A stretch of 64,000 nt of DNA, from IMG/VR virus record IMGVR_UViG_3300034072_002211, positions 186,001 through 250,000 of that record, one strand, 5' to 3'. A model generated the notes under the pieces. It saw only the letters and a program-made list of their open reading frames with translations, was not told where the DNA came from and made no database searches. Position 1 is the stretch's first letter. Every line of letters begins with the position of its first letter. This document shows, piece after piece, positions 341 to 60,911 of this stretch. The position numbers were made by a program, and so were the translations under genes.

Positions 341-375
341 CCAGTTCTAACAGAAACTGGTTAGCAGTCAACCAG
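341..375 (-). promoter_or_regulatory. repeated early-promoter/hairpin element
   Basis: CCAGTTCTAACAGAAACTGG..GTCAACCAG; on the minus strand TTGAC(-35) and TGTTAG(-10 region) within an inverted repeat. Confidence 0.75.
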
Positions 376-727
376 AATTCTTCAACCTGTCGAGGAAGCT
401 GGCGCCTTTGATGACCTGGATCGGTCGAGCCACCGGTGGCGTCACCTGCAGTCCCTCGATCCAGGCGTCGGTGCCATCGCATTCCAGCGTATCACCATGG
501 GTCTGCTTGACATTTGCGATGATCTGTTGGTGCCAGTCGTCCAGTTGCTTCTTGTTGAACTTCTTCATATAGCCGTCATCCATCTTGCGATGGCCGAGGC
601 ATACGACGTCGTCATTCTCGATGCGGATGCGGAACATCACGCCTTCGAGCAACCGCTCCGCAACCCCATATCCGTCATAGAGGGCTTCTTCCACGGGCCC
701 GTTGTCAGTCATGATCTGTAGGGTCAT
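368..727 (-). CDS. hypothetical phage protein
   Basis: 119 aa ORF, co-oriented, overlapping neighbour. Confidence 0.75.
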   Translation of the reverse strand: MTLQIMTDNGPVEEALYDGYGVAERLLEGVMFRIRIENDDVVCLGHRKMDDGYMKKFNKKQLDDWHQQIIANVKQTHGDTLECDGTDAWIEGLQVTPPVARPIQVIKGASFLDRLKNSG

Positions 728-1083
728 CCCACTACTCCAAAGACAAGTTTTCGCTTGCCATCCAGAGCACTGAAACCCTCCACAGTCAAGTGAAAGGATT
801 CAGCATGTTGGGCCATCCAGCCGCGCTCTACGAGACGACCAACAATCTCGCGCTCAAACGGCGTTTCTGGAGTAAAAGAATTCTTAGAGACTTTGGCAGC
901 TAGGTCCAAGCCTAGGGTGCGCTCCAAGATGAATTGTTCAGGCTTATTGGGCTCCGCTGTCGAGGGTGAAGCCGATTTCCTCGGCTTCGAGAAGCCACAC
1001 GAGCGTGAGCTCTGCGTCTCCACCATGGGCATTGAGATGCTCATACAGCACGTCCTCGATCGGGTAGAAGCTGTCCCGCTCAT
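724..1083 (-). CDS. hypothetical protein (true start probably near 930)
   Basis: fills the gap between neighbours; 5' part overlaps ORF 944..1219. Confidence 0.4.
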   Translation of the reverse strand: MSGTASTRSRTCCMSISMPMVETQSSRSCGFSKPRKSASPSTAEPNKPEQFILERTLGLDLAAKVSKNSFTPETPFEREIVGRLVERGWMAQHAESFHLTVEGFSALDGKRKLVFGVVG

Positions 1084-1219
1084 TGATGAAGCTTCTTACT
1101 TCGCGCGGTAGCTGATCGAACGCTGCCATGTCAATCCGTCGCCCTTCCTCCCAGTGGATTGTGGGCTCGGACTGAGTAGGCTGAGCATCCAGGCTCATAA
1201 AGCGGAGAGGCTGAATCAT
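944..1219 (-). CDS. hypothetical phage protein
   Basis: ATGA overlap with upstream gene. Confidence 0.7.
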   Translation of the reverse strand: MIQPLRFMSLDAQPTQSEPTIHWEEGRRIDMAAFDQLPREVRSFINERDSFYPIEDVLYEHLNAHGGDAELTLVWLLEAEEIGFTLDSGAQ

Positions 1220-1452
1220 CGAAACGAAAACTCCCCGATCTGTTGCTTGAGCTGTTGGATGCCCTGGCTGGTCATCTTCCAGCCGTCACCCTGCGTCTCC
1301 ACGTGGCCCTTGTCCTGAAGGCTCAGGATGAGGGGACGGTCCTTGGCCATGCGGCGCTCCCAATAGTTCTTGGTCGCCTTCATCGACGTGCCGCGCAGGC
1401 CGATGATCCGCATGGCGAGTTTGACCTCGTCGTAGGACATGCCAAAGTCCAT
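1216..1452 (-). CDS. small hypothetical protein, possible winged-helix
   Basis: ORF in operon; LQDKGHVET..W.MT..G pattern. Confidence 0.7.
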   Translation of the reverse strand: MDFGMSYDEVKLAMRIIGLRGTSMKATKNYWERRMAKDRPLILSLQDKGHVETQGDGWKMTSQGIQQLKQQIGEFSFR

Positions 1453-1455
1453 GGC

Positions 1456-1824
1456 TCAGGCCACCGTCTTCAGCGTGAAGTGCCGGGTGTGCTGGCGGGT
1501 GCCCTTGACATCGACCATATCGCGCGGGAGGTCATAGTAGTGCGCGACCCAGCCGCTCTCGCGAACAACCTCGCGGGTCACCTCGACCTGGCCCTTGTTC
1601 TTGCCGCGCGTGATGATGCGCTTGGTCACCTTGACCTTGCGGTTGTGCTTCTCCAGGCTGTAGAAGCGCACCTTACCCGCGTTGGGGCCACCCGGACGAC
1701 CGATCAGACCGAAACCGTAGTGGGTGGAAAAGCCGGTGCGAAAATCACCCTCGAGCTTGCGGAGGATTTCGCCCTTGGTCTTCGCCGTCATCTTGCTCGG
1801 GCGAATCTTGACCACAATTGCCAT
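1456..1824 (-). CDS. basic hypothetical protein
   Basis: AGGAGATCG RBS and promoter element at about 1845-1890. Confidence 0.8.
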   Translation of the reverse strand: MAIVVKIRPSKMTAKTKGEILRKLEGDFRTGFSTHYGFGLIGRPGGPNAGKVRFYSLEKHNRKVKVTKRIITRGKNKGQVEVTREVVRESGWVAHYYDLPRDMVDVKGTRQHTRHFTLKTVA

Positions 1825-1904
1825 TTCCGATCTCCTGTTTTCGTTTCCGATAAACCAGGAATAGCAGAAATAGGTGAGTCGTCAACCAGAATTTCAGTCA
1901 CAGA

Positions 1905-1930
1905 AATGGGGAGGATTTCTCCTCCCCATT
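1905..1930 (-). terminator. intrinsic terminator
   Basis: AATGGGGAGGA-tttc-TCCTCCCCATT perfect 11-bp stem. Confidence 0.75.
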
Positions 1931-1935
1931 TGGCT

Positions 1936-2340
1936 TTACGAGCTCTTGGTCTCGTCGGTGCCGGTGGAATCCTCTCCGCCGGTATCGGTCTCTGTAGCCG
2001 TTTCGCCACCGGTGGTGTCCTCCGACGGAGTTTCCGTGGTTGGCGTTTCCGGCGCAGGCTCATCTGCCACCGGCGTATTGGCAGTCACCGCGCTTGCGAG
2101 CTGGTTGGTGCTTGCGTCGAGTTCATCGGCAAGAGCTGCGATTTCTGCCTCAGCGGCTTCGCCCGCTGCTACCTTTTCCGATAGTTCTCGAAGCTGACCG
2201 GAGATGCTCTGAACTAGCGTGAGAACAGACTGGGTCACAGTCTTATTCTCAGCGATCTCGGCTTTCAGTCGATCTAGTGCGGCACTCATGAGATACCCTC
2301 CAATGATAATGGCGACAATGGTGATGGCTACCGCCCACAT
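1936..2340 (-). CDS. coiled-coil protein with acidic T/E-rich tail (start may be 2288)
   Basis: heptad pattern then low-complexity tail; followed by terminator. Confidence 0.75.
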   Translation of the reverse strand: MWAVAITIVAIIIGGYLMSAALDRLKAEIAENKTVTQSVLTLVQSISGQLRELSEKVAAGEAAEAEIAALADELDASTNQLASAVTANTPVADEPAPETPTTETPSEDTTGGETATETDTGGEDSTGTDETKSS

Positions 2341-2438
2341 AGACTTTCCTTCTGGTTGGCGGTGGGGTTTATCCCCAAGCCAGCTATAAGCTAAGTCTAT
2401 GTGCCTATCAAATGGATCCGTTAACTATACTGAAGATT

Positions 2439-2624
2439 TCAAACAAATAGCGCAAAACCAACACAAATTGTCGCGGCTATCATTAGCCCCAACGAGACTC
2501 TGCCCCATAGCCGCTCTTCAGCATAGCCAGAGAATGGCATGTGGCCACTGGCATGATCAGCCGCCAGAAAGCTTCCCAGGAGCAGCAGTACAGCTACGAT
2601 GAACAGGATGAAGTTGATATTCAT
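2439..2624 (-). CDS. small two-TM membrane protein
   Basis: two hydrophobic segments. Confidence 0.65.
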   Translation of the reverse strand: MNINFILFIVAVLLLLGSFLAADHASGHMPFSGYAEERLWGRVSLGLMIAATICVGFALFV

Positions 2625-3319
2625 CCGTTGGTCAACTTTGCCAAAGTGACTTTGTCCTTGATGTCAGTGCCGTCGATCACCACCAAATCGCTGGGGTAGA
2701 TCGTGGGCGAAATGTTCTCTTCGGTCTTGGCGTGACCCTGGCGCGTTTTGATGCTTTCCACCTTGATCGTGCCCTTGGGTGTGATGTTGGTGATGTAGCC
2801 GAAACGGGTGTGGACGTCACCCTTGCGACCCTCGGGGAAGATGACGAGCTGACCGACCTCGAGCAGCACGCCGAAATGGTCGTAGAGCTTCTTGGCCTCG
2901 ACCTCGGGCTTGGCCTTGGTGGTGTAGGCCCACGTGGTGCCCTCGAGGTCGAAGCGGAGAACCACCCCTTTGGGCCAGAAGCTCTGCCAGCCCTGATATT
3001 CGACCTTGATCACGTTGTCGCGATCGTCGAACACGATGTCCCAGACCTTTTTGGACATCTCGAGTTCTTCGCCGCGCCCGGTGCGAACCACTTGGTAGAA
3101 GTCAGTGACCTCCTCGGCCTTGATGTCGATTCGACCGATAGTGCCCTTGCGCGCACCTTGCGTGAACTCGACCCAGATCTTGTTGCCGGCCTCGAGGTAG
3201 GTCTTGAGGTGGCGCATCACATCCTTGATCTTGTAGGTATCGGACGTGCGGCTGGGGAACAGGTACGCGGGTGATTTGCCCTCGAACTTCAGGCTGTGGT
3301 AGGGGATTTCAAAGGCCAT
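2621..3319 (-). CDS. hypothetical protein, paralogue of 29799..30569
   Basis: shared D..G..l.vG.lV / ..v.vES / C-terminal ..L.KL pattern. Confidence 0.8.
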   Translation of the reverse strand: MAFEIPYHSLKFEGKSPAYLFPSRTSDTYKIKDVMRHLKTYLEAGNKIWVEFTQGARKGTIGRIDIKAEEVTDFYQVVRTGRGEELEMSKKVWDIVFDDRDNVIKVEYQGWQSFWPKGVVLRFDLEGTTWAYTTKAKPEVEAKKLYDHFGVLLEVGQLVIFPEGRKGDVHTRFGYITNITPKGTIKVESIKTRQGHAKTEENISPTIYPSDLVVIDGTDIKDKVTLAKLTNG

Positions 3320-3831
3320 CAGGCAGGTTCTCCCAGAACTTCTTCGATCTTGGCGAGGCGGTTCTTCAGCGCCTCATAGTCTGCGCGGGTGGGTTGCCAG
3401 CTGGTGTTCTCGAGCTTGCGACGGGCGAAGAACGCGCCGTCGGCTGCGAGGATCTGAGCGTCGCTCACGGGATGCTTTGCGATCAGTCGGACGACCAGTT
3501 CGCGCAGGTCGGACATTGTCCGCAGCTTGAGGGTCTTGCCCAGCCATGCGCGCGCCTTGGTTGATGCGGTCTCCCAGGCCTTGTTCTCCTCGTCCAACTG
3601 CTCGTCGTAGGGCAGCTGGGTGGGAAAGCCTTCGACCTCCCGGCTGACATAGAAGACCTCGGTGGAATGCCGTGTCGCGATAGCTTTGACCGCACCATGG
3701 CTGACATTCTCGAGAATCTTGGCCGACCGGCTATCGGCGTTGCGGACGTAGTCTGAGAGTGCGCCGATCCATGCGGAATCCTGATCGCCGAAGCTATCAT
3801 GGGAAACGCTGATCAGTGTGTGGTAGCCCAT
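3319..3831 (-). CDS. hypothetical phage protein
   Basis: GGAGATCG RBS and promoter element upstream. Confidence 0.8.
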   Translation of the reverse strand: MGYHTLISVSHDSFGDQDSAWIGALSDYVRNADSRSAKILENVSHGAVKAIATRHSTEVFYVSREVEGFPTQLPYDEQLDEENKAWETASTKARAWLGKTLKLRTMSDLRELVVRLIAKHPVSDAQILAADGAFFARRKLENTSWQPTRADYEALKNRLAKIEEVLGEPA

Positions 3832-3907
3832 GCCGATCTCCTTGTTGCCTAGCCTCTTGATAACACCAAAGTGGTATCAGTCAACCAGGAGGTGACTGAA
3901 CAGTTCC

Positions 3908-4414
3908 TTAGTCCGACCATTCCATGCGACGCTTGTGCGAACGCTCGAGGTCAAAGTCATAGTTGCGGTTGGCGAACGTTGCGAGGTCCAGCCGATGGTT
4001 GCGGCTACCATACTGCTCCTTGATCAGAACAGTCTTCTCAGTGATCGAGAGGATCTCGCCCAGGTAGTCGAAGTTGTAGGAGTCATAGATCGCGGTGTCA
4101 CCCTCGGTGAACTTGATGTCCACATCCTTCCAGTTGCCATAACGGCCGGTCAGATGGACAACGGTCTTGCCGTCCTCGTTCTTGCTGAACTGTGCGAACA
4201 TGCCGGTGTGATCACCACCGTAGATCGTGCCGCGATGCTTGCGAACCTTGCTGGTGATCGGAACGGGCGCGCTGCGCGGCATTGCCATGAGCTCGCGAGC
4301 GCGTTCAGCCGCAGCGGTGAGAAGAACCTGCTTGCGAGCTTCCAGTGCGGCGATCTGCGCGTCGATGCTCTCGACCGTCTCGACCTTGGTGCCAAACTGA
4401 ATGACTTCACCCAT
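3908..4414 (-). CDS. hypothetical phage protein
   Basis: start reassigned to MGEVI after AGGAGATCG RBS. Confidence 0.8.
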   Translation of the reverse strand: MGEVIQFGTKVETVESIDAQIAALEARKQVLLTAAAERARELMAMPRSAPVPITSKVRKHRGTIYGGDHTGMFAQFSKNEDGKTVVHLTGRYGNWKDVDIKFTEGDTAIYDSYNFDYLGEILSITEKTVLIKEQYGSRNHRLDLATFANRNYDFDLERSHKRRMEWSD

Positions 4415-4477
4415 TTCCGATCTCCTTGTTGCTATGTCACCAGTCCTACACGAAACTGGTGACACGTCAACCGCTTT

Positions 4478-4687
4478 TTAGCTCAACCAGACACCGATTG
4501 CCGTGATGATGATCGCGATGAACAGTGCGTCGATGACGTTGGTCGTATGGCTGACGACCAGATTGCGAGCCAGCTTGGCGCTCTCCGGCGTAGTCACGCG
4601 GAACTTCTTCAGCATCAGGAAATCCCTGACATACTGGTAGATCAGGCCACCCACAAAGGCGCCAATGAAAAGGTAAATGAAGTTCAC
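4478..4687 (-). CDS. small two-TM membrane protein
   Basis: GTGA overlap start, hydrophobic helices. Confidence 0.65.
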   Translation of the reverse strand: MNFIYLFIGAFVGGLIYQYVRDFLMLKKFRVTTPESAKLARNLVVSHTTNVIDALFIAIIITAIGVWLS

Positions 4688-5022
4688 TTGCGCTTTCCCT
4701 TCAGTTTGGAGACAAGGGCCTGCTTGGCCCTCTGGCTCTGGTTGCGACGCTTCTGCCACTCAGGCAGGCCCTCGTCAGGATCCAGGAGTTCGAGATCCGT
4801 ATAGCGGAACCGTTCCCGGAAGGAATAGCTCTTGCCCACACCTGGTCCACCGAGGCCAACGACCAGCGGAGTAGTTGCCGCGAGGGCCAACGCCGCGAGG
4901 TTCACGTGGCTCTTGTGGCCAAAGGGTCCTGTCGGAATAGCATAGTTGCCGACCTTGCGGTCTTCGAGAAGCTGACGGATGCTTTCGGTGAGCTCAGGGC
5001 TTGCGCTGGGGATATTGTCCAT
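4684..5022 (-). CDS. short protein with P-loop (possible truncated kinase)
   Basis: VVGLGGPGVGKS Walker A, LLDPD. Confidence 0.65.
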   Translation of the reverse strand: MDNIPSASPELTESIRQLLEDRKVGNYAIPTGPFGHKSHVNLAALALAATTPLVVGLGGPGVGKSYSFRERFRYTDLELLDPDEGLPEWQKRRNQSQRAKQALVSKLKGKRK

Positions 5023-5285
5023 TAGCGGCGCTCCTTCTGCTCGAATTGGATATAGTCGGCGGCGTCGTAGAGGCCAAGCCGGTTTGCTATTGCGCGGAGA
5101 TCAGCGAGCTGCTCGTCGAGCGCGCGCTGGGTCTGTGCGAAGGACGGAATGCTCTTCATGTCTTCGAAGATGTTGAACGCGCGATCATTCTTAGCGAAGA
5201 GTGCGCGGGCGACCATCCGGTCCTTGATTGCGGCTTGCGCCGCTTCCGGGGAACCTGCTTCGTAGCTCGATGGGGCAGTCTGCAT
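5022..5285 (-). CDS. hypothetical phage protein
   Basis: AGGAGAACG RBS and promoter element. Confidence 0.75.
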   Translation of the reverse strand: MQTAPSSYEAGSPEAAQAAIKDRMVARALFAKNDRAFNIFEDMKSIPSFAQTQRALDEQLADLRAIANRLGLYDAADYIQFEQKERR

Positions 5286-5348
5286 TTCCGTTCTCCTGTT
5301 CTGTTATCCTGGTTGTAACACCAGTTTGAACAGGGTCAACCAGAATTA

Positions 5349-5548
5349 TGGGGAGAGTGTTGCCACCCTCCCCAATGATCTTTTCCTAGCTTCGCGGCAA
5401 ACCCCGTCTTCAGCACCCTTATCCGGACCGCGTTAACCTCCAAGCAAGCATGATGTCCACGTAACGACGAGACTCACTTTTTGGCAGCTAAGACCTCCAA
5501 GCCCATGATCGGCGGACTCTTATGGAACCGGGGGCACCTATCTGTTAA
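5349..5548 (-). ncRNA. candidate ~200-nt small RNA
   Basis: own promoter (TTGACG 5580-5575, TACGTT 5558-5553), no convincing ORF, ends in a GC hairpin at 5349-5374. Confidence 0.5.
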
Positions 5549-5576
5549 CCGCAACGTAACACCAGCCAAGGGTGCG

Positions 5577-6026
5577 TCAAGCCGCAAGTTTGAGACAAAG
5601 GTCATCAAGTGACATTCTCTCCACGACCTTTGCGAAGTCCCTGTGGTAGATGACCTGCGTCTCACCCTTTCGGACTTTGTGATGGGGCACCTCAAGCACT
5701 ACCAGCATCATGGAATCATTGTGCTTCTCTGCGAGCATCTTCATGCGCGCTAGGCCCTCGAGGGGAAACCAAGCCTCCAGCTGCTCCAGAGACTCAAAGG
5801 CGCATTGCCAGGAACGGCGACCCGCGTCGGGCCAGCGACGCATCTCTTTGACAGTGAGGTGAAAGCCAGCCCAGAATCGAGCCAGCTTGTCATCACCGTC
5901 GGGACTGGGGTGGAGATCCTTCATCTGCGGATCGTTGTCGTTGAGGCTCTGCCGGGCGCACTTGAAACCAAAGCCCCGTGCGTAGCAGCCTTCGCCTTCT
6001 TCGTTCTCGAGCCGATAAATGAGCAA
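5577..6026 (-). CDS. hypothetical phage protein
   Basis: GGGAGG RBS, promoter element; C-terminus LKLAA. Confidence 0.75.
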   Translation of the reverse strand: MLIYRLENEEGEGCYARGFGFKCARQSLNDNDPQMKDLHPSPDGDDKLARFWAGFHLTVKEMRRWPDAGRRSWQCAFESLEQLEAWFPLEGLARMKMLAEKHNDSMMLVVLEVPHHKVRKGETQVIYHRDFAKVVERMSLDDLCLKLAA

Positions 6027-6040
6027 GCTGACCTCCCTCG

Positions 6041-6086
6041 TTACCAGTCCTGTTTAGCAGAACTGGTGAGGGAGTCAACCAGTTTT
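6041..6086 (-). promoter_or_regulatory. repeated early-promoter/hairpin element
   Basis: TTACCAGTCCTGTTTAGCAGAACTGGTGA (identical at 6745 and 7162) plus GTCAACCAGTTTT. Confidence 0.85.
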
Positions 6087-6489
6087 AGGCAGCCTGGAGG
6101 CGACCCGAGAGGTCGAGTCCGCGCCGATGCTCCTCGGAGATCAGGCCCTGCTCGACAGCCGCGTCCAGGATGATCTGATCCATGATCGGCTCGGTGACCT
6201 TGTGGATGCCGTTCCAGTCGGTGCGGCGAACACTGTGACGACCACGACCACCATACGTGAAAGCGCCGACGCTAATGCCGAAGATGCTCCGGATCAGCGG
6301 ACCGCGGTTACCGCCGCCATTGTTGTTGATGTCATAGTAGGCGTTCGAAGCCTGGCGGAACTTCTCGAGCTTCTTGTTGCGGCTGCGCGGCGACTCGACC
6401 GCACCTTCTGCGGGAATCAGCTTTTCCAGCTGGTCGGCGAGGGCCTGGTGGACGCCGTTGTTACCCCAGTAGGTCTTCATCTTTTCCAT
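6085..6489 (-). CDS. hypothetical phage protein
   Basis: AGGAGATCG RBS; C-terminus RLQAA. Confidence 0.8.
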   Translation of the reverse strand: MEKMKTYWGNNGVHQALADQLEKLIPAEGAVESPRSRNKKLEKFRQASNAYYDINNNGGGNRGPLIRSIFGISVGAFTYGGRGRHSVRRTDWNGIHKVTEPIMDQIILDAAVEQGLISEEHRRGLDLSGRLQAA

Positions 6490-6513
6490 TGCCGATCTCC
6501 TTGTTGCTTCCTA

Positions 6514-6556
6514 TTCACCAGTTCTAGCAGAACTGGTGAAGGTGTCAACCAGTTTT
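6514..6556 (-). promoter_or_regulatory. repeated early-promoter/hairpin element (perfect palindrome)
   Basis: TTCACCAGTTCT-AGC-AGAACTGGTGAA 12-bp perfect stem, then GTCAACCAGTTTT. Confidence 0.85.
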
Positions 6557-6726
6557 TAGTAGCTTTCCCGACGCGCGTTGCGAGCACCGGCCAGATAGGC
6601 TTCCTCCAGAGCTTTCTTGATCTGCCAGACCGACAGTTCGTGGAAGTCGAGCGAGTCGCTGTTGCGCGTCTCCAGCGTATCGAGTTCCAGGTGCTTCTGC
6701 GCGATCTCTGCCAGCGTCTCGTCCAT
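6556..6726 (-). CDS. DUF6900-like small protein (56 aa, not in ORF track)
   Basis: MDETLAEIAQKHLELDTLETRNSDSLDFHELSVWQIKKALEEAYLAG; GGAGATCG RBS. Confidence 0.75.
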   Translation of the reverse strand: MDETLAEIAQKHLELDTLETRNSDSLDFHELSVWQIKKALEEAYLAGARNARRESY

Positions 6727-6744
6727 GTTCCGATCTCCTCTTGC

Positions 6745-7145: not shown

Positions 7146-7161
7146 GTCGATCTCCTCGTTG

Positions 7162-54616: not shown

Positions 54617-55113
54617 TGGTCCCTGAACTTTGCCACCGTCAAGTGGAGACCAAAGTTGTAGGGCAGGTTGAACTCTTCGGCGCGGAGATCAAGAAGCCAG
54701 GGGCACTTGACGTCCACAAAGAAGAACTCACCCTTGGCGCACTGAACATGCGGGCTGTAGAGGAAATCAACCTCACGGCCCTGATACTTGCCCCACAGGG
54801 CCTGCCGGTGGTGCTTGGGCACATTGCGGAGATCACCCTCGCCGCGCAAGATGCTGATGTGCGCGTCGTAGCTGGGCTGAAGAACACCGTGGCCCTCAAC
54901 GCCAGTCATGTTGATGAGCTCACGGTCGATGAACCAGCGGAACAGCCGCGTGATCTCGCGGTCCACTTCCAGAACCAACCAACCTGTGGTGTTGCTCTTG
55001 TTGGCCCGCTTGGGATCATAGACCAAGCGACCCCGTGACTTGAGCCAGCCGGGCTCGCTCATCATGAGCTTGGGGCGCTGAATCTCGCGCCGAGCGGGAG
55101 AAAGAATCGTCAT
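54562..55113 (-). CDS. 2H phosphoesterase
   Basis: two HxS/T motifs: AHISI and LHLTV. Confidence 0.75.
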   Translation of the reverse strand: MTILSPARREIQRPKLMMSEPGWLKSRGRLVYDPKRANKSNTTGWLVLEVDREITRLFRWFIDRELINMTGVEGHGVLQPSYDAHISILRGEGDLRNVPKHHRQALWGKYQGREVDFLYSPHVQCAKGEFFFVDVKCPWLLDLRAEEFNLPYNFGLHLTVAKFRDHWVGQFDPRLRTPHWYGK

Positions 55114-55158
55114 GTCACCTGTTTAGCACAGGACTGGTGTGAGTCAACCAAAGAAAAA

Positions 55159-55183
55159 GGAGAGCGGGACAAGCCCGCTCTCC
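55159..55183 (-). terminator. intrinsic terminator
   Basis: GGAGAGCGGG/CCCGCTCTCC plus T-tract. Confidence 0.8.
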
Positions 55184-55208
55184 ACCCTGGTGCGACCCTC
55201 AGGGTAAC

Positions 55209-55583
55209 TTATGCGGCTTCGACAAACTTGCGCTTGCCATGATCCCAGTCGTAGGACTTGCCGCCCATACGGAGCGCCACGAGCGCCTCGAGGTTGATGT
55301 TGCGGAACGCGCCCTTCTCGAGCTCATCCTCGCTCTTGCCGGCGTTGTGAGGCGCCTTGGGATCCAGCTTCTGCATATCGAACACAGTGAGCAGGTTGTG
55401 CTTCGCGGGATCGTAGCTCTGACCGACTCCCTTGACACCCTTCTTCACGCCCCGGCGGCAGTTCATCGTGCGGAGGCTGGGCTCACCGGGCTTTGCGGTG
55501 CGCTTGACGAAGTCCACGGTGAAGAGCTGACCGCCCTTGGTGTTCTCGAGGAACTGATCCAGCGTCATTTCGGCGCGTGCCAT
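55209..55583 (-). CDS. SH3/Sm-like (WYL_2-like) protein
   Basis: FTVDFVKR...RTMNC...VFDMQK...FRNINL; ends FVEAA. Confidence 0.65.
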   Translation of the reverse strand: MARAEMTLDQFLENTKGGQLFTVDFVKRTAKPGEPSLRTMNCRRGVKKGVKGVGQSYDPAKHNLLTVFDMQKLDPKAPHNAGKSEDELEKGAFRNINLEALVALRMGGKSYDWDHGKRKFVEAA

Positions 55584-55650
55584 TGTGCGATCTCCCTAAA
55601 GTTGATACAGATCAAATAACAGGGAAATCGCACCTTGTCAACCGCGCATC

Positions 55651-56109
55651 TTACTTCGATCTGCGAGCAGCCTTGCGAGCCGCTGCTCTTGCCCCTGCTC
55701 CCTTGATCATCGCTGCGGGCCGCTGAGCCCTCAAGAGGCGGGAAATGCGAGGAGTTGTGCCTGACGTGCTTGTTTCCTTGGGAGGCATTGAGACGTGCTC
55801 TGCGCCCTCGGGATTGATCCGCTTGATGCGGTCGGAACCCTTGGGAGCAATGGTGAGCTCATGGTCACAAGCCTTCAGCATAGCTCGCACGGTAGCAAGC
55901 TGCGGGAACATCGTTTCCCTGTAGAGCCACTTGCTGATCGTCTGTGGGGTTGGACCCCCGCGTTCATGAACCCGCTTGAAGGAGTGGCCCGAGTTGAGGA
56001 CCACCGCCACACAGTCGTCCCTCAGATCCTCGAGGTCCGTCAAAGGTTCACGCTTCATTGGTACTTTTCGTGCCACCGGTCGATCTCCTAGAGTTGCGGC
56101 AATTCCCAC
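55651..56109 (-). CDS. XRE-type HTH regulator
   Basis: TPQTISKWL...PQLATVRAMLKA. Confidence 0.65.
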   Translation of the reverse strand: MGIAATLGDRPVARKVPMKREPLTDLEDLRDDCVAVVLNSGHSFKRVHERGGPTPQTISKWLYRETMFPQLATVRAMLKACDHELTIAPKGSDRIKRINPEGAEHVSMPPKETSTSGTTPRISRLLRAQRPAAMIKGAGARAAARKAARRSK

Positions 56110-57422
56110 TTGACCTTGATCGTGCCGCCCTTTGTGGGCTTACGCTTGCGGAAAGCAAGGAAGCCCCTAAAGAGCAATTCGATCTTCTGTTCCCTCACAA
56201 TACCACTGAGGTCCATCAGCTTCTCGCGAGTAATGTAGGCCGCGCTGTCAGCTGCGATGTTCACGCCAGTGATGACCTGCTCCAGGAATTCCTTGGCGTC
56301 CTTCTCGTCCACCTTCATGAATTCATAATAGCAGAATCCCACCACACTCGGCGGAGCGAGACGCTTGGCCTTGTTTCCAAACTTGTAGGGAAACTGAGCG
56401 GCTTCGTCGATCAACCGATCGTCTTTGGCCCGCTCATAAACATCTGGTCCCGAGATGCGATTGAGGTTCGCAAATCCTCGTCCCTCGTTGCGCTCATAAG
56501 AGAGCACAAAGCGGCTGATAGCTGCCATCGTGGTGGGCTGAGTGAATCCATCTGCGCTCAACTGATCGTGTGGACCACGGTTGGCACCAGTGTCCACGGT
56601 CTTGCGCGTTTGCCGCTCAACACCAAAGACGAACAGCACGGGAATGCCAATGCCAGTTTCGAGGACCGCATAGCTGCGATGCTGGCCATTGTTCATCAGC
56701 CCTTCCTTGCTGATGATGATCGTCTCGCCGTTGAACTCCCAGCGGTTGTTCGCAATGTCGTCCACATATTGAGCCAACTTTGCGATGCGGATCGGCCGGT
56801 TGCCCTCATTGTTGTCGATGAGCACCTGAGCCAGAGCCGGCGTGAGAATTGCCTGCTCAGTGTGGACTTGCCGATTGCCCATCTTGACGCGAGTGTTGAA
56901 CCACGCCGTTGCGACCTCGGGATCGTTGAGGTCTCCTGCGTCAGCAGTCTGTTCCTCGAGAATGTCTTCCTGGAAGTGGGTGGCGGGGAAGTGATGCTCA
57001 GGATCAGCTTCTCGCTTCAACGCTTCCACATCCATGAACGCGTCGGTCACATTGTCGGGAAGATCTCCCTTGAATGCGATCCGATTGTGCTCAGGATCAT
57101 ATTCACCCATGAGCTTTTGCGCCGTCATCTCTGTCTCTGGCGTCTTGATGCCAGAGAGATGATGCTCGCCCAGGCTTGATGCCCAGGCAAAATTACCCCG
57201 CACCGCATGGCTAAGCTTGACGCCCTCTTGCCCCAGCTGAGCGGTCAGGACACCCGACTGCTGACTGAGCCGGACCTTCTGGTAATCCTCAGGAACGTGC
57301 TCGAGGAACTCTTTGCTAACGCCCAGGCTCCAGACCAGTCGGGGCGTTGCTTTGCTGCCCATTCGCAATGCGCTCAAGCGCATGTCAACTGGGATTGTTC
57401 GTTCTGCCGTGATGCTAGTCAC
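56088..57422 (-). CDS. ParB/Srx-like N-terminal domain protein
   Basis: ILTPALAQVLIDNNEGNRPI...W.FNGETI...NGQHRSYAV. Confidence 0.7.
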   Translation of the reverse strand: MTSITAERTIPVDMRLSALRMGSKATPRLVWSLGVSKEFLEHVPEDYQKVRLSQQSGVLTAQLGQEGVKLSHAVRGNFAWASSLGEHHLSGIKTPETEMTAQKLMGEYDPEHNRIAFKGDLPDNVTDAFMDVEALKREADPEHHFPATHFQEDILEEQTADAGDLNDPEVATAWFNTRVKMGNRQVHTEQAILTPALAQVLIDNNEGNRPIRIAKLAQYVDDIANNRWEFNGETIIISKEGLMNNGQHRSYAVLETGIGIPVLFVFGVERQTRKTVDTGANRGPHDQLSADGFTQPTTMAAISRFVLSYERNEGRGFANLNRISGPDVYERAKDDRLIDEAAQFPYKFGNKAKRLAPPSVVGFCYYEFMKVDEKDAKEFLEQVITGVNIAADSAAYITREKLMDLSGIVREQKIELLFRGFLAFRKRKPTKGGTIKVKWELPQL

Positions 57423-57663
57423 GAGTCTTCTCCGATCTCACAAATGCGACCATGCGGTCGGTAAAAGACTTCTCCACGGATTCACGCTCCGTGGTGAAGT
57501 GTTCAAGGGCTTCAGCGAGGTTGGGGTTCAGTTCTGGGTCAAAGAAAAGCAGAATTGCTCGACTTGCCAGAACTTGCTTCGTCATCCCCGTTCGCTTGCT
57601 CACCACATCGAGGGCACTACTGGCCTCTCTGGTGATGGCTACACTGGTATGGGTTGACGTCAT
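57415..57663 (-). CDS. ribbon-helix-helix-like protein
   Basis: TSVAITREASSALDVVSKRTGMTKQVLASRAI. Confidence 0.6.
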   Translation of the reverse strand: MTSTHTSVAITREASSALDVVSKRTGMTKQVLASRAILLFFDPELNPNLAEALEHFTTERESVEKSFTDRMVAFVRSEKTRD

Positions 57664-57718
57664 GTGGGCCTCTCGTTTGGCCCACAGAACTTATAGAGCT
57701 GCTATAACGTGTCAATAG

Positions 57719-58156
57719 TCAAGCTATAGACGAAATCTCGCGCTCCAAAATGTCATCAGCAACTGAGAAAAGTTGTGCTTTTTGAACGAGTTGTAGAGCT
57801 ATCGGTGTGGAACGGGTAGGATGATTGAGTTCAAGACTGATGAGGCAGGTCCTATAACTGAACAAGTCAGTAGCCTCAACATTACCGAGGTTTATCAGCA
57901 AATGAAAGTGCCTGAACTCGGCTTTGCGAGCCTCAAGAACATCCTTGAACCGCTGTATAAACCACGGTCCACCAGCCCTCGCGATCATGCCTTTGTCAGC
58001 AAAGAAGCGACCCTTGGGCTCATGCTTCATGAGTTCAAAACCCAACATGGGTGTGGTGAGGCAGATGCTTGTGTGATTGTTGGAGAACCTGCCCAGGAAC
58101 TCCTGTCCCCTGAATATGCGGGCAGTATCAACGACGTTAGGAACTAGCTTGCTCAT
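57719..58156 (-). CDS. hypothetical protein
   Basis: 145 aa, lower GC. Confidence 0.55.
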   Translation of the reverse strand: MSKLVPNVVDTARIFRGQEFLGRFSNNHTSICLTTPMLGFELMKHEPKGRFFADKGMIARAGGPWFIQRFKDVLEARKAEFRHFHLLINLGNVEATDLFSYRTCLISLELNHPTRSTPIALQLVQKAQLFSVADDILEREISSIA

Positions 58157-58424
58157 GCGCCTAAGCTACAGATAATGACGGGGAGGACAAGCCTGAGCCT
58201 CTCCTCCCCGTCACCGTTAGCCTGTTTACCTAGCACGTCTATGTCGGGTCGCAAGTCAACATAGACGCTACTATCCCGCACTCCTCTGCGCCAGGCCAAG
58301 AAACTCTAGAGCCCCCGACGCTGGCCTGTTCGTTCACTGTGGCAAACGACACCCTCAACAGGCCACAAGGACACCGTAGAGCAAGATCCACAGATTTCAA
58401 GCGGTAATTGGCGAAATGCTTTGG

Positions 58425-58919
58425 TTATTGCGACGAGTCGTGCACTTTGGCAGATGAGTGTGTGATAATTGCGACACACGTGAGCACAAAGCCCAGGGGC
58501 AAAAACGACCACAATCCGACTCGGACAGCAAGGCTTCCTACCGCCTCGAGGTCTCGGAAAGTCAGATAGCCGGCCATGTGGAACACGAACGCGACAATGA
58601 ATGCCACGAACACTAGCGCCACTGGAATCAGCAGAGCACCCAGCCAGGCTTCGCCGATCTTGCCCATGAGAGTCGTGGGAGCCGGCGGTGCCTGTTCGAG
58701 CACCTTCCAGCCCAACTTCGACGCGGCTTCATCGGCGTAGCGGTCAGCTGATACCTTGTTGCTTGTGAAATATGTGAGGCGCACGTGGACCCCTTCAGGG
58801 GTCTCTAAGTGGCTTTCATAGGACTCTGGCTGCTCCGGCGCGCTGGGCGTCGGAATGAACATCGTGGTCATCTGAGGCCCGTTGGGCCCTTGCGTCACGC
58901 CGAAAGCAATCTGTGTCAT
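58425..58919 (-). CDS. membrane protein
   Basis: two C-terminal TM segments; promoter element upstream. Confidence 0.7.
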   Translation of the reverse strand: MTQIAFGVTQGPNGPQMTTMFIPTPSAPEQPESYESHLETPEGVHVRLTYFTSNKVSADRYADEAASKLGWKVLEQAPPAPTTLMGKIGEAWLGALLIPVALVFVAFIVAFVFHMAGYLTFRDLEAVGSLAVRVGLWSFLPLGFVLTCVAIITHSSAKVHDSSQ

Positions 58920-58954
58920 GTGCCCAAAGATAAACCCTGGGCTCAGAATGTCAA

Positions 58955-59254
58955 CTACATGAAGGTGACACGGAGGTAGGTTGTTTCTTCGGCACGTCTC
59001 GGACCCTGATCTACCACGGGACCCGTGATAGTCTCGAGGTAAGCGAACTCATAGGTGCCGTCCTTGTCCTTGACGGTAGAGAAGAGAAGCTCACGCATCT
59101 GCTTCTTGTTGAGTTCGTTGTCGATGATCATGCGGAAGATTCGCCTACCGTCGTGATCCACAAAGTGGGCGACATTGACATAGATGCCTAGCTTCTCAGC
59201 CACGGCTTCAGTGAGGAGGTGACCAACGGGATAGTCACGCGCGTCTAGGTGCAT
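58955..59254 (-). CDS. hypothetical phage protein
   Basis: GAGG RBS. Confidence 0.7.
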   Translation of the reverse strand: MHLDARDYPVGHLLTEAVAEKLGIYVNVAHFVDHDGRRIFRMIIDNELNKKQMRELLFSTVKDKDGTYEFAYLETITGPVVDQGPRRAEETTYLRVTFM

Positions 59255-59294
59255 AGAGACCTCGTAGGAGAGGGGTTGCTCTCCTACTTAGTCC

Positions 59295-60827
59295 TCATGC
59301 GGCGTAACTGACCTGCCCTTCCCAGTTGCCAACATACTTGTTACCAACCCGCTTCTTGCTGGTCTCGTAAACTGCCAGGACGTCCGGAAGGATGCTGTAG
59401 AGGACATTGATCTGTCCGTCCTGGAAGATCTGCTTACCCGTCTGCCGGTTGACCATTGCGTGAAGGCTGGGGTTGTCAATGGCCATGCGAATCTTGGGAG
59501 CCATGACCTCGAACTCCTTAGCGCCCATCCCGAACCATTCAAAGACCATAGTGGAGATCGTAGCGTTGACCATCACGCCGTGGCCCTTACGGCAAAGTGG
59601 GCAGGTGCTGTTCTGCTTGATGTTGTAAACGTGACCGCAAGGATCGGAGCAGCGAGTCCAGACGTTGTCCTGCTTTGCGTAGGTCTTTGCGCTGATCTCA
59701 CGGTCCTCGCCCTCGAGGACCAAGCCCTTGGCCGCGCGGGGCCACTCGATGGCTTCCACGTAGCCATGCTCCTTGAGGTTGCCCTCGAAGTCGTAGATAA
59801 AGCCTTCGGGCTTGCCCTCACACTTGCGAAGCACTCGGCCGCACATTTGCTGGTAGAACGCAATGTTGCCGACCTTGCGAGTGAGGAAGCAGAACTTGGC
59901 CAGCTTCTCGTCAAAGCCCTCGCAAAGAGCGTCAACGCTGATCAGCACCTCAGTCTCGCCCCGGTGGAAGCGCGCGAAGATTTCCTCACGGACCTTAGCA
60001 GCCTGACGGGGCACATAGTCGACATCACCAACCACACCCTTGCCTGCCGTGACCACCTCGCACTTGATGCCCTCACCCAGGAACTGCGCTTCCAGCATCT
60101 TGCTATGGTTGGTGTCGTCGGTGAAAACAATCGTGCGCTTGTTGGAATGACCAGCAGTGGCGAGCAGCCAGGTCTTCGCCACGTGGGCACCGGGGGTTTC
60201 AAAGTAGCGGGGACGGGCAAGATCACCGCGCGCGATCAGCTCGCTCATTGTGGCCGCGATCACAATGCGATCACCATACCATTCCTCGAGGCTCTCACCC
60301 GGATCGTTCTTCTCACGGTAAGGAGTTGCGGTGAAGCCGACCACCTTTGCGTTGGGCCAGTTCTTGCGAATCTTCTGGAACTCAGCAGCCGTTGCCTTGT
60401 GGGCTTCGTCGAAGAGGATCATTGTGGGAACAAACGAGGGGTCAAAATAGAGATCGTTCGTGACGTTGATGTCCAGGGTGTTGGTCATCGTCTTGGGGAG
60501 AGTCACAAGCAGGTTGCGCTTATAATCACACACAAGCGGATGGCTTTCTGCGCCAACGAGGTAGCTCTCAATTTTGTCGTGGAGGGCGGAGGTCTCAACT
60601 CCAAAGCCATGCTCCATGGTTGCGACCGTCTGGCCCAGGAGGACCTGAAGGTTCACAATAACCAGCACCCGGCCGCCGCGCTGAATTTCCTCATGCGCGA
60701 CATCGCCCATGACCACAGTCTTGCCATAGCCCGTTGGAGCCACCACCAGAGCAGACGGATTTTTCTCTAGCAAGCTAAACACTTGCTTAGTTACGTTGCG
60801 CTGTTCCTCGCGGGGCTTGATTCGCAT
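59295..60827 (-). CDS. SF2 DEAH helicase (RadD/ResIII-like) with C-terminal Zn finger
   Basis: APTGYGKT, DEAH, TATP, EGFD, QMCGRVLR, C..PC..C..C. Confidence 0.9.
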   Translation of the reverse strand: MRIKPREEQRNVTKQVFSLLEKNPSALVVAPTGYGKTVVMGDVAHEEIQRGGRVLVIVNLQVLLGQTVATMEHGFGVETSALHDKIESYLVGAESHPLVCDYKRNLLVTLPKTMTNTLDINVTNDLYFDPSFVPTMILFDEAHKATAAEFQKIRKNWPNAKVVGFTATPYREKNDPGESLEEWYGDRIVIAATMSELIARGDLARPRYFETPGAHVAKTWLLATAGHSNKRTIVFTDDTNHSKMLEAQFLGEGIKCEVVTAGKGVVGDVDYVPRQAAKVREEIFARFHRGETEVLISVDALCEGFDEKLAKFCFLTRKVGNIAFYQQMCGRVLRKCEGKPEGFIYDFEGNLKEHGYVEAIEWPRAAKGLVLEGEDREISAKTYAKQDNVWTRCSDPCGHVYNIKQNSTCPLCRKGHGVMVNATISTMVFEWFGMGAKEFEVMAPKIRMAIDNPSLHAMVNRQTGKQIFQDGQINVLYSILPDVLAVYETSKKRVGNKYVGNWEGQVSYAA

Positions 60828-60911
60828 TTGTTGACTCCGGTTATATCCGATCTCTTGCCACCTGTATAAAGAGGTGAGGCAAGCGAGTCAACTCTGGTTT
60901 TCACCTTTTTT

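What the first reader, a model, noticed from the sequence alone, without database searches (positions are those of the whole stretch)
341..60895. Genome-wide promoter-hairpin cassette heading ~35+ mostly single-gene modules, with alternative stems over the -10 and -35 boxes
Seen in sequence: a conserved element of form CGATCTCCT...ACCAGT-N-TAGCAGAACTGGTGA-N4/5-GTCAACCAG recurs between genes, with GTCAAC near 367, 1881, 3880, 4466, 5335, 6074, 6544, 6778, 7195, 7953, 12250, 14079, 15667, 17335, 22120, 23311, 24363, 25339, 29770, 33678, 37098, 41858, 46366, 55142 and others. A 29-bp block is identical at 6041, 6745 and 7162, and 6514-6540 is a perfect 12-bp palindrome. On the minus strand it reads TTGAC(-35)...GCTANA(-10)...AGGAGATCG(RBS). 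The central AACTGGT can pair either left, putting the -10 in a loop, or right with ACCAGTT next to the -35. Established knowledge: this matches the Caulobacter-type sigma70 consensus; PeSL promoter-stem-loop cassettes shuffle genes in T4-type phages; N4 vRNAP promoters and integron attC sites are recognised as hairpins. Inference: an integron-like array in which the element is promoter, operator or cruciform switch, and recombination site for gene swapping.
Basis: partly seen in the sequence, partly recalled or inferred. Interest (0 to 1): 0.72.

Follow-up and report, generated by a model that had tools for sequence, protein, structure and literature searches.

The report
Early promoter cassettes with overlapping hairpins
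A giant uncultured phage starts its early genes from about 70 near-identical promoter-plus-leader cassettes of the alphaproteobacterial type, roughly half with a hairpin lying over the promoter; this is the PeSL arrangement already known from T4-type phages, seen here in a new lineage, and not an integron-like system.

Summary
The repeated element is real and far beyond chance. The window holds 44 copies on the minus strand and 1 on the plus strand. It is not genome-wide: the copies fill one early-gene block of about 100 kb in a 277-kb phage record. Read on the minus strand, each copy has an A/T tract that usually holds the upstream stop codon, then CTGG-TTGAC, 14 nt, GCTAnAwC, a predicted +1 A, a purine-rich leader, AGGAGATCG and ATG. 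This matches the Caulobacter RpoD consensus. The same element occurs 28-63 times, again in one block on one strand, in four related metagenomic jumbo phages, and more weakly in Sinorhizobium phage Phosso. Inverted repeats over the -10 box or the -35 box are enriched (47% of copies against 11% of controls). The arms covary, strongly for the -10 stem. Strong -35 and -10 stems almost never share an element, so there is no per-element switch. The stems lack U-tracts and are not conserved between orthologous promoters. Synteny breaks are not enriched at the elements, and no integrase was found. Verdict: these are PeSL-type early promoter cassettes, a new member of a known kind. The function of the hairpins is unresolved; the most likely role is on read-through RNA.

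The parts
341..58975 (-). Array of 44 promoter-leader cassettes in the window. It is part of about 66-75 copies in genome 166-272 kb. The T of TTGAC lies at 371, 1885, 3884, 4470, 5339, 6078, 6548, 6782, 7199, 7957, 8270, 9675, 12255, 12931, 13445, 14084, 15671, 16364, 17339, 20545, 22124, 22747, 23316, 24367, 25344, 29774, 33682, 34219, 36314, 37103, 37453, 38269, 38942, 39645, 41371, 41862, 46370, 46958, 47397, 47908, 48808, 51252, 55147 and 58954.
   Evidence: Pattern GTTGAC-N17-TA: 44 minus-strand sites against 1 plus-strand site; nhmmer profile; gene map
6543..6558 (-). Model copy e6548, upstream part: stop codon TAA of the upstream gene inside the A-tract (6558-6556), then CTGG and the -35 box TTGACA (6552-6543).
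   Evidence: The stop codon of the upstream ORF starts 9 nt before TTGAC in 47 elements and within -14..-4 in 124 of 248.
6521..6528 (-). Model copy e6548: -10 box GCTAGAAC (consensus GCTAnAwC; the TA is invariant), 14 nt after TTGACA.
   Evidence: Caulobacter RpoD consensus in PMC8144410
6514..6540 (-). Model copy e6548: -10 stem. The arms are 6540-6529 and 6525-6514 (12 bp) around a 3-nt centre. The predicted +1 A is at 6514.
   Evidence: (RNA fold -18.9 kcal/mol, z -3.9)
6487..6501 (-). Model copy e6548: Shine-Dalgarno block AGGAGATCG (6501-6493) and the start codon ATG (6489-6487) of the 134-aa gene.
   Evidence: The start codon lies 50-64 nt after TTGAC in 202 of 249 elements.
6041..6069 (-). 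29-bp block (spacer, -10 box and 3' arm), identical to the blocks at 6745-6773 and 7162-7190. It heads three unrelated genes.
   Evidence: the genes have different orthologues in G003
4435..4464 (-). -10 stem of e4470, 10-11 bp (TGTCACCAGT / ACTGGTGACA).
   Evidence: (-24.6 kcal/mol, z -5.5)
46335..46364 (-). -10 stem of e46370, 10 bp (TGCCACCAGT / ACTGGTGGCA). It differs from e4470 by a compensatory change.
   Evidence: (z -4.2)
22727..22765 (-). -35 stem of e22747: 17 pairs, with the -35 hexamer in a 5-nt loop.
   Evidence: -28.3 kcal/mol, z -5.8. The orthologues in G003, G004 and G005 carry different hairpins.
48759..48802 (-). e48808: an 18-pair stem in which the spacer and -10 box pair with the Shine-Dalgarno block. 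The 5' arm lies upstream of the predicted +1.
   Evidence: -25 kcal/mol, z -4.6
6033..6074 (-). e6078: the outer stem CTCCCTC (6074-6068) pairs with GAGGGAG (6039-6033, the SD) and encloses the -10 stem.
   Evidence: -29.3 kcal/mol, z -4.9
1899..1931 (-). Canonical G+C-rich hairpin plus T-rich tail (intrinsic-terminator type), directly upstream of e1885. A second one lies at 5340-5374, upstream of e5339.
   Evidence: Such separate terminators precede only about 7-12 of 249 elements.

Best explanation
The element is the early-gene expression cassette of a T4-superfamily-like jumbo phage whose host is probably an alphaproteobacterium. It is a strong promoter for the host's principal sigma factor. 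Its parts are an A/T tract at about -42..-40, an extended -35 (CTGG-TTGAC), 14 nt, a -10 box (GCTAnAwC) and a +1 A. This is fused to a short purine-rich leader of 16-30 nt with AGGAGATCG and the start codon. The cassettes are packed so tightly that the upstream gene's stop codon sits in the A/T tract or in the TGA of TTGAC. About half of the cassettes also carry one inverted repeat centred on the -35 box or on the -10 box. The evidence shows selection for pairing as such, not for a fixed sequence. My inference is that the repeat acts as an RNA hairpin in transcripts that read through from the upstream cassette, as an attenuator, a 3'-end stabiliser or, in a subset, a mask of the Shine-Dalgarno site. 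Transcripts started at the cassette's own promoter would lack the 5' arm. This is the PeSL architecture (promoter-early stem-loop) described for T4-type phages. Shown: the anatomy, the strand and block restriction, conservation across relatives, and arm covariation. Inferred: use by host RNAP, the +1 position, and the RNA-level role of the hairpins.
For: Promoter identity:
- The only invariant columns in 48 copies are GTTGAC and TA, at a fixed spacing.
- The logo of 249 copies reproduces TTGaCgS / GCtANAWC, including the C at the last position.
- All copies are on the coding strand, immediately upstream of genes.
- Start codons lie 50-64 nt downstream in 81% of copies.
- Two copies precede tRNA genes whose 5' ends lie 37-40 nt after TTGAC, which fits a +1 near position 34.
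- No sigma-70 region 2 domain or RNAP beta' was found in this record. No sigma domain was found in two complete relatives.
- The phage has T4-like DNA polymerase and baseplate genes.

Conservation:
- The profile finds 28, 34, 58 and 63 copies in four relatives, each set in one block on one strand.
- It finds 16 weaker copies in Sinorhizobium phage Phosso.

Hairpins:
- Perfect stems of 7 bp or more occur in 42% of elements, 10% of random genomic windows and 3.6% of shuffles.
- Loop centres cluster at two places only.
- Chimeras between elements fold worse than the real elements: z -3.4 to -7.7 for the -10 stem in all five genomes.
- The cis-versus-trans arm test gives 5.62 against 4.67 bp, 0 of 2000 permutations.
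- The count of structure pairs gives covariation 0.238 against 0.160, 0 of 500 shuffles, and all slid controls are lower.
- Orthologous promoters carry hairpins of different sequence and position.

RNA-level hint:
- The region upstream of +1 is more complementary to its own SD than to the SDs of other elements in all five genomes (combined z 4.9). Examples reach 8-18 pairs.

Architecture as in PeSL.
Against: - There are no expression data. The genome comes from a subsurface metagenome and no RNA run holds it.
- The hairpins are not followed by T-rich tails: 5 or more T in 8 nt in 4% of -35 stems and in none of the -10 stems. They are therefore not canonical intrinsic terminators.
- The G-T against A-C mismatch counts do not favour the sense RNA strand (8 against 7). 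The terminal mismatches are shaped by the consensus.
- Hairpin presence is not conserved between orthologous promoters (OR 1.18, p=0.71), and the hairpin type is the same in 21 pairs and different in 24. No particular promoter needs its hairpin.
- Hairpins are only weakly commoner where the upstream gene ends at the element (51% against 38%, p=0.07).
- The words TCACCAG/CTGGTGA (TCACCT/AGGTGA in relative G005) are used more often than pairing alone requires. This leaves room for a protein site.
Confidence: 0.6

Rival explanations
1. Operator model. The words TCACCAG/CTGGTGA flanking the -35 and -10 boxes are binding sites for a phage-encoded (or host) DNA-binding protein that shuts off or boosts all early promoters together. 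On this view the inverted repeats reflect symmetric half-sites.
For: The words are about 15-fold concentrated in the elements: 38 of 125 minus-strand copies lie in 2% of the genome. The symmetry centres are fixed relative to the boxes. The preferred word changes by genome: CACCT in 33 of 57 G005 spacers against CACCAG in 1 of 57. The spacer word is commoner than its complement. CTGG before TTGAC is kept whether or not a partner exists.
Against: Flanking bases covary instead of being fixed, as in TGTCACC/GGTGACA, TGCCACC/GGTGGCA, CCCCACC/GGTGGGG and TTCACC/GGTGAA. Some stems lack the word altogether, for example CTAGTTCAC/GTGAACTAG and the 17-pair stem at genome 169947. The arms occur in both orders (class A and class B) and with loops of 3-12 nt. 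Half of the promoters have no repeat.
Confidence: 0.15
2. DNA-level structure model. The repeats extrude as cruciforms or hairpins in supercoiled or transiently single-stranded phage DNA. They either tune promoter opening (supercoil-sensing, N4-like in geometry) or serve as hot spots for junction-cutting and recombination enzymes.
For: The symmetry centre of the -10 stem sits at the -12/-11 TA. From my own knowledge, this is the geometry of the N4 virion-RNAP promoter hairpins. There is no strand asymmetry in the mismatch types. The best copy has 12-bp arms and a 3-nt centre, which is ideal for extrusion.
Against: Most loops are 8-12 nt and most stems 5-10 bp, which is poor for extrusion. A full -35/-10 pair at fixed spacing points to duplex recognition. 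No single-subunit RNAP domain was found, although the control for that search rang nowhere. The complementarity to the SD region has no meaning at the DNA level.
Confidence: 0.1
3. Recombination-site model. The element is the junction at which cassettes are gained, lost and swapped, either by a site-specific system as in integrons or by homologous exchange between copies as proposed for PeSLs.
For: There are about 70 dispersed direct repeats of 40-60 bp, with gene content that turns over fast between relatives. Three neighbouring copies share an identical 29-bp block, while their orthologues in G003 do not. One promoter-plus-gene module lies in different places in G001 and G004, with its ends at elements. 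PeSL-mediated deletions and mini-circles were shown in RB49/phi1.
Against: Junctions with an element are broken no more often than junctions without one: G000 against G003, 33 of 50 against 61 of 79, p=0.22; the other pairs give p=0.12-1. Orthologous elements are more alike than non-orthologous ones (60% against 49%), and neighbouring elements are not homogenised (p=0.2-0.6). No tyrosine recombinase was found here or in two complete relatives. Cassettes carry their own promoters, unlike integron cassettes. The 'joints' in metagenome contigs all come from other, more abundant genomes that carry the element; the phage's own contigs are collinear. The nearest relatives are only about 72-77% identical in DNA, so the test has low power.
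Confidence: 0.1
4. By-product model. The inverted repeats have no function of their own. They arise because the consensus is partly self-complementary and because templated (quasi-palindrome) mutation or exchange between copies perfects such repeats.
For: Hairpin presence and type are not conserved between orthologous promoters. Half of the promoters lack a hairpin. The -35 stem in a fixed register is explained by column composition.
Against: The excess over chimeras that keep column composition is seen in five genomes. Element-specific extensions to 11-18 pairs occur. Strong stems at the two sites are mutually exclusive, which suggests that one hairpin is enough and therefore that hairpins are selected.
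Confidence: 0.05

Closest known systems
PeSL (promoter-early stem-loop) cassettes of T4-type phages: RB49/phi1, T4/PST, KVP40/nt-1 (Arbiol et al. 2010, PMC2839356; Comeau et al. 2014, PMC4122927)
   Same: Both are intergenic repeats running from the upstream stop codon in an AT-rich stretch, through a near-consensus host sigma-70-type promoter, to the Shine-Dalgarno site and ATG. Both carry a stem-loop placed variably, most often between the -35 and -10 boxes or over the -10 box. Both are densely clustered in a block of small, fast-turning-over early genes. The consensus is lineage-specific in both.
   Different: The promoter here is of the alphaproteobacterial type (GCTAnAwC, no TATAAT); an E. 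coli-type scan finds only 1 of the copies in 20 kb. The arms are built from TCACCAG/CTGGTGA rather than G-runs and C-runs. No T-tract follows the stems. Only about half of the copies have a stem. An association with indels could not be shown with the distant relatives available. Terminator activity and mini-circles are untested.
Principal-sigma (RpoD) promoters of Caulobacter and other alphaproteobacteria: TTGaCgS, 10-14 nt, GCtANAWC
   Same: The -35 box, the -10 box and their spacing match position by position.
   Different: The phage copies add an almost invariant CTGG before the -35 box, an A/T tract, a C-rich spacer word and a conserved leader. They are far more uniform than host promoters.
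T4 genes e, soc, 49 and I-TevI: a hairpin that masks the ribosome-binding site in read-through early transcripts, with a promoter inside the hairpin (from my own knowledge; T4 post-transcriptional control is reviewed in PMC3014915, a paper only listed and not read here)
   Same: In a subset of cassettes the 5' arm lies upstream of the predicted +1 and pairs with the SD (window 48759-48802, 6033-6074, and 5339 and 13445; genome 252314). Only self-initiated transcripts would then expose the SD.
   Different: In T4 the internal promoters are late promoters and the cases are few. Here the promoter is an early, host-type one. The signal is statistical (31 of 237 elements with 7 bp or more) and untested.
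Hairpin promoters of the phage N4 virion RNA polymerase (from my own knowledge)
   Same: An inverted repeat is centred near -11/-12 of the start site.
   Different: The N4 promoters have no -35/-10 pair and are read by a virion-borne single-subunit RNAP from an extruded 5-7 bp, 3-nt-loop hairpin. Here a full sigma-70-type promoter is present, the loops are mostly 8-12 nt, and no such polymerase was found (a weak control).
Integron attC sites and cassette arrays
   Same: Both are arrays of short, same-strand gene units separated by imperfect inverted repeats.
   Different: Integron cassettes lack promoters and depend on IntI, attI and Pc. Here every unit has its own promoter, and no tyrosine recombinase is found in this record or in complete relatives.

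Membership tests
PeSL cassettes of T4-type phages | Near-consensus promoter for the host's principal sigma factor in each repeat | tested here: met
   Invariant GTTGAC and TA at fixed spacing; the logo equals the Caulobacter RpoD consensus. Activity itself was not measured.
PeSL cassettes of T4-type phages | AT-rich stretch upstream of the -35 box that holds the stop codon of the upstream gene; SD and start codon at the 3' end | tested here: met
   Positions -7..-5 are A or T in more than 90% of copies. The upstream stop codon starts at -14..-4 in 124 of 248 elements and is the TGA of TTGAC in 31. The start codon lies 50-64 nt downstream in 81%.
PeSL cassettes of T4-type phages | Stem-loop inside or next to the promoter (between the -35 and -10 boxes, or over the -10 box) | tested here: met
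   Stems of 6 bp or more over the -35 box (20%) or the -10 box (33%), against 5.5% in controls for each. Covariation is supported. About half of the copies have none.
PeSL cassettes of T4-type phages | Clustering in hyperplastic regions of small non-core early genes of a T4-like myovirus | tested here: met
   One block of about 100 kb on one strand. 165 mostly small genes, of which only 89 have reciprocal best hits in the nearest relative. T4-like DNA polymerase and baseplate genes.
PeSL cassettes of T4-type phages | Indels and replacements between close relatives end at the repeats | tested here: inconclusive
   No enrichment of synteny breaks at elements. One transposed module is bounded by elements. 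The nearest relatives are only 72-77% identical in DNA, and no closer one was found.
PeSL cassettes of T4-type phages | The stem-loop terminates or attenuates upstream transcription; mini-circles form between repeats | not testable with these tools
   There are no RNA data. The stems lack T-tracts, so canonical termination is unlikely.
Intrinsic (Rho-independent) terminators | G+C-rich stem directly followed by a T-rich tract | tested here: not met
   Five or more T in the 8 nt after the stem in 4% of -35 stems and 0% of -10 stems, which is no more than in controls. Separate canonical terminators precede only about 7-12 of 249 elements.
Integron (attC array) | IntI tyrosine recombinase, with promoterless cassettes expressed from a common Pc | tested here: not met
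   PF00589 is absent from this record (60% complete) and from two complete relatives, while the controls rang in 14 of 14 genomes. Each cassette carries its own promoter.
N4-type hairpin promoters | Recognition by a phage single-subunit RNAP; no -35/-10 pair; 5-7 bp stem with a 3-nt loop | tested here: not met
   A full -35/-10 pair is present. The loops are mostly 8-12 nt. PF00940 was not found, but its control rang nowhere, so that part is weak.
Two-state (alternative-stem) switch | Both competing stems present in the same element | tested here: not met
   Stems of 7 bp or more at both sites occur in 2 of 249 elements, fewer than independence predicts (OR 0.19, p=0.013).

The most novel reading that the evidence does not exclude
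The hairpins form a systematic insulation device. Because each promoter sits inside a hairpin whose 5' arm is transcribed only from upstream, read-through RNA folds and is stopped, trimmed back or translationally masked at every cassette border. Self-initiated RNA stays open. On this reading the trick known from a handful of T4 genes (e, soc, 49, I-TevI) is used across a whole early region. The hairpins would be replaced so quickly that orthologous promoters carry different ones.
Probability: 0.2. Interest if true: 0.6.

Novelty: new member of a known kind. Interest (0 to 1): 0.4.

Why it matters
The finding extends PeSL-type composite promoter/stem-loop cassettes from enterobacterial and Vibrio T4-type phages to a group of uncultured jumbo phages of 277-462 kb. 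Their promoters are of the alphaproteobacterial type, which also gives a host clue for these metagenomic genomes.

The data set is unusually large: 249 copies in five genomes. It shows that pairing over the promoter is under selection, while the hairpin's sequence, its position (-35 or -10) and even its presence turn over quickly. This constrains models of what PeSL stem-loops do.

The cassettes are also a ready-made set of strong, compact promoter-leader parts for alphaproteobacteria. Sinorhizobium phage Phosso offers a cultured system in which the open questions could be tested.

Tried and rejected
- A megablast of 20 kb against GenBank phages found no match.
- The E. coli-type promoter scan misses the elements because the -10 box is not TATAAT-like.
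- The exact-pattern scan of IMG/VR gave mostly chance hits; only 6 of 119 loci were true relatives.
- G-T against A-C mismatch counts, meant to tell RNA from DNA structure, were uninformative: 8 against 7, and the terminal mismatches are dominated by consensus bases.
- The test for anticorrelation between internal hairpins and separate upstream terminators had too few terminators (12) to decide.
- The synteny-break analysis was run with three different gene calls. None showed enrichment at elements.
- Adjacent elements are not homogenised.
- Searches for closer relatives in metagenome and viral contigs found none.
- Laying metagenome contigs on window 3800-8400 gave 'joints' at elements. These come from other, more abundant genomes that carry the element, so they are no evidence for cassette deletion.
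- Rfam and ARAGORN find nothing in the window.
- Rejected readings: integron, N4-type promoter, canonical terminator and per-element switch (see the membership tests).

Full report
**Where the window lies.** The window is bases 186001-250000 of a single 277,444-bp viral record with 54% G+C. IMG/VR's CheckV estimate rates the record about 60% complete. It was assembled from a subsurface metagenome, and no RNA run holds it. It encodes a 3,699-aa virion protein, a baseplate wedge protein, a family-B DNA polymerase and an NAD-dependent ligase. The window itself encodes a class-I lysyl-tRNA synthetase, an NAD synthase, a cytidylyltransferase-like protein and a helicase. The nearest GenBank phage is Sinorhizobium phage Phosso (469 kb), at only 34% amino-acid identity in the helicase. 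Nothing similar is found at the DNA level. No sigma-70 region 2 domain, RNAP beta' domain, tyrosine recombinase or single-subunit RNAP domain was found. Two complete relatives also lack the recombinase and the sigma domain.

**The observation.**
- All 24 GTCAAC positions, the 29-bp block identical at 6041, 6745 and 7162, and the 12-bp arms around a 3-nt centre at 6514-6540 are confirmed.
- GTCAACCAG occurs 25 times against 0.5 expected.
- The pattern GTTGAC-N17-TA has 44 minus-strand and 1 plus-strand match in the window.

Two descriptors are too strong:
- The element is not genome-wide. A profile built from 55 seeds finds 59 copies, all on the minus strand, and 55 of them lie between 169 and 268 kb.
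- The modules are not mostly single-gene. Of the 44 window modules, 19 hold one gene and the rest hold 2-6.

**Anatomy, on the minus strand.** An ungapped alignment of 48 copies has GTTGAC and TA as its only invariant columns, always 17 nt apart. The logo of 249 copies from five genomes gives these parts, numbered from the first T of TTGAC:
- A or T at -7..-5, then C-T-G-G at -4..-1.
- TTGAC, followed by a C/T-rich spacer.
- G-C/T-T-A-n-A-a-C at +20..+27.
- A conserved A at +34, which is +1 if the TA is at -12/-11.
- A leader almost free of T, then the Shine-Dalgarno block and the start codon, which lies at +50..+64 in 81% of copies.

This matches the Caulobacter RpoD consensus, TTGaCgS and GCtANAWC 10-14 nt apart, as quoted in PMC8144410. 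An E. coli-type scan finds only one copy in 20 kb.

The stop codon of the upstream ORF starts at -9 in 47 elements and at -14..-4 in 124 of 248. In 31 elements it is the TGA inside TTGAC. The cassettes therefore abut the preceding gene. Two copies outside the window precede tRNA genes whose 5' ends lie 37 and 40 nt after TTGAC. This fits the predicted start and shows that the promoter part works without the leader part.

**Relatives.** An exact-pattern scan of IMG/VR gave six true relatives among 119 loci. A sequence-only covariance model of the element then found 28, 5, 58, 34 and 63 copies in five viral records. Two of these are complete, with terminal repeats (436 and 462 kb). In each record the copies are clustered in one block on one strand. 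The simple pattern gives forward/reverse counts of 66/2, 32/0, 40/1, 57/2 and 54/2. Phosso has 16 weaker copies, for example a terminator followed by GGTTGAC, 14 nt, GTTAAA and the same GAGATCGAAATG end. A cultured phage of an alphaproteobacterium therefore shares the design, which supports the host inference.

**The hairpins are real.**
- Perfect stems of 7 bp or more occur in 42% of elements, against 10% of random windows from the same blocks and 3.6% of shuffles.
- Loop centres fall at two places only: +5/+6, so that the -35 hexamer is in the loop, and +20..+22, at the GC|TA of the -10 box.
- With stems of 6 bp or more, 20% of elements have the -35 stem, 33% have the -10 stem and 47% have either. 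Controls give 5.5%, 5.7% and 11%.
- Single copies fold with z-scores of -3.6 to -5.8.

**The arms covary.**
- Arms of one element pair better with each other than with the arms of other elements: 5.62 against 4.67 bp, 0 of 2000 permutations.
- Chimeras that keep column composition fold worse than real elements. For the -10 stem, z is -3.4 to -7.7 in all five genomes. For the -35 stem, z is -4.4 to -7.0 in three of five.
- On the fixed-register alignment the -10 stem has a covariation score of 0.238 against 0.160 (0 of 500 shuffles), and every slid control is lower.
- The -35 stem in a fixed register is no better than its column composition.
- Examples of compensatory change are TGTCACCAGT/ACTGGTGACA against TGCCACCAGT/ACTGGTGGCA, and CCCCACCAGTT/AACTGGTGGGG. 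Some stems share no words with the consensus.

**What the hairpins are not.**
- They are not a per-element switch. Strong stems at both sites co-occur in 2 of 249 elements, fewer than chance predicts (OR 0.19, p=0.013). One hairpin, at either site, seems to be enough.
- They are not canonical terminators, because the tails are not T-rich. True G+C hairpin plus T-tract terminators do exist directly upstream of a few elements (window 1899-1931 and 5340-5374), but only in about 7-12 of 249.
- They are not fixed operators, because flanking bases covary, the arm order flips and the loop length varies.
- They are not tied to particular promoters. Between orthologous promoters, hairpin presence is independent (OR 1.18, p=0.71). 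The hairpin type is the same in 21 pairs and different in 24.

**A hint at the RNA level.** The stretch upstream of the predicted +1 is more complementary to its own Shine-Dalgarno region than to those of other elements in all five genomes. The z-scores are 1.9, 2.6, 3.8, 0.5 and 2.1, combined 4.9. In the window the clearest cases are:
- 48759-48802: 18 pairs, -25 kcal/mol.
- 6033-6074: CTCCCTC with GAGGGAG around the -10 stem, -29.3 kcal/mol.
- The elements at 5339 and 13445.

In these cases the 5' arm would be present only in RNA that reads through from upstream. The cassettes abut the preceding stop codon, so any 3' structure for the upstream message must overlap the next promoter. Hairpins are somewhat commoner where the upstream ORF ends at the element (51% against 38%, p=0.07). 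Mismatch-type counts cannot tell RNA from DNA.

**The recombination claim.**
- The nearest pairs of genomes are only 72-77% identical in DNA. No closer relative was found.
- With three gene-calling schemes, junctions that carry an element are broken no more often than junctions that do not. For this genome against G003 the counts are 33 of 50 against 61 of 79 (p=0.22). The other pairs give p=0.12-1.
- Orthologous elements are more alike than non-orthologous ones (60% against 49%). Neighbouring elements are not homogenised. The elements therefore mostly travel vertically with their genes.
- There are anecdotes in favour. The three identical 29-bp blocks head unrelated genes, and their orthologues in G003 differ. 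One promoter-plus-gene module sits in different places in G001 and G004, with its ends at elements.
- Metagenome contigs laid on 3800-8400 show the phage's own contigs as collinear. The many 'joints' at elements belong to other, more abundant genomes that carry the element.

[quoted passage not shown] These cassettes are clustered in hyperplastic early regions and have a lineage-specific consensus. The present element meets those structural features. The behavioural features (terminator activity, indel association, mini-circles) are untested or inconclusive here. It differs in promoter type, arm sequence, absence of T-tracts and the roughly 50% occupancy of stems.

I therefore file it as a new member of a known kind. 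The promoter identity is close to certain. The hairpin's role is open, and action on read-through RNA is the reading I think most likely.

Noticed in passing
window 51112-51225 (minus strand), downstream of the element at 51252: A structured leader of about 85 nt lies before the 97-aa gene at 50838-51131 and is conserved in relative G003. A long stem (GCTGTTCAC / GTGAACAGC) carries an apical stem with 3 compensatory changes between the two genomes. There is no Rfam match. It is a candidate cis-regulatory RNA.
   Followed up: partly
window 42751-45538 (plus strand): A low-G+C island (about 49% against 56%) holds four genes on the opposite strand, inside the early block. One has a Laminin_G_3 (ConA-like lectin) domain and the next a DUF4376 domain. 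This looks like a tail-fibre or adhesin module, possibly acquired.
   Followed up: partly
L121:3634-3712 (genome about 253.6 kb) and L122 (genome 270-277.4 kb): ARAGORN finds a tRNA with anticodon CTA (amber-suppressor type) directly behind one of the promoter elements. It also finds a cluster of 17 tRNA genes at the end of the record. None lies in the window.
   Followed up: partly
window 12860-12931 (minus strand); orthologues in G003 and G004: The leader after the element at 12931 contains a small hairpin (GGGCAATGGTGCCC). It is kept in the orthologous leaders of two relatives with lengthened or shortened G/C arms. It may be a gene-specific translational operator.
   Followed up: no
window 17346-19070, 28502-29557, 39635-41329: Auxiliary metabolic and translation genes lie in the early block: a cytidylyltransferase-like (NMNAT-type) protein, an NAD synthase and a class-I lysyl-tRNA synthetase.
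   Followed up: partly
window 6418-6571 in run X1: Contig depth over this one element (about 550) is far above that of the phage's own contigs (11-13). A 64-kb contig from another sample of the same study matches only the 48-nt element. Several other, more abundant genomes in that habitat therefore carry the same cassette.
   Followed up: partly
relative G005 (IMG/VR record of 462 kb), early block: The spacer word is TCACCT(A) in 33 of 57 elements, where the other genomes use TCACCAG. In some copies the upstream CTGG is replaced by AGGTG. This is a genome-wide shift of the arm sequence.
   Followed up: partly
window 9570-9601 (minus strand): The strongest canonical terminator-like hairpin of the first 20 kb has 14 pairs and a T-rich tail. 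It borders a gene-poor stretch at 9460-10090.
   Followed up: no
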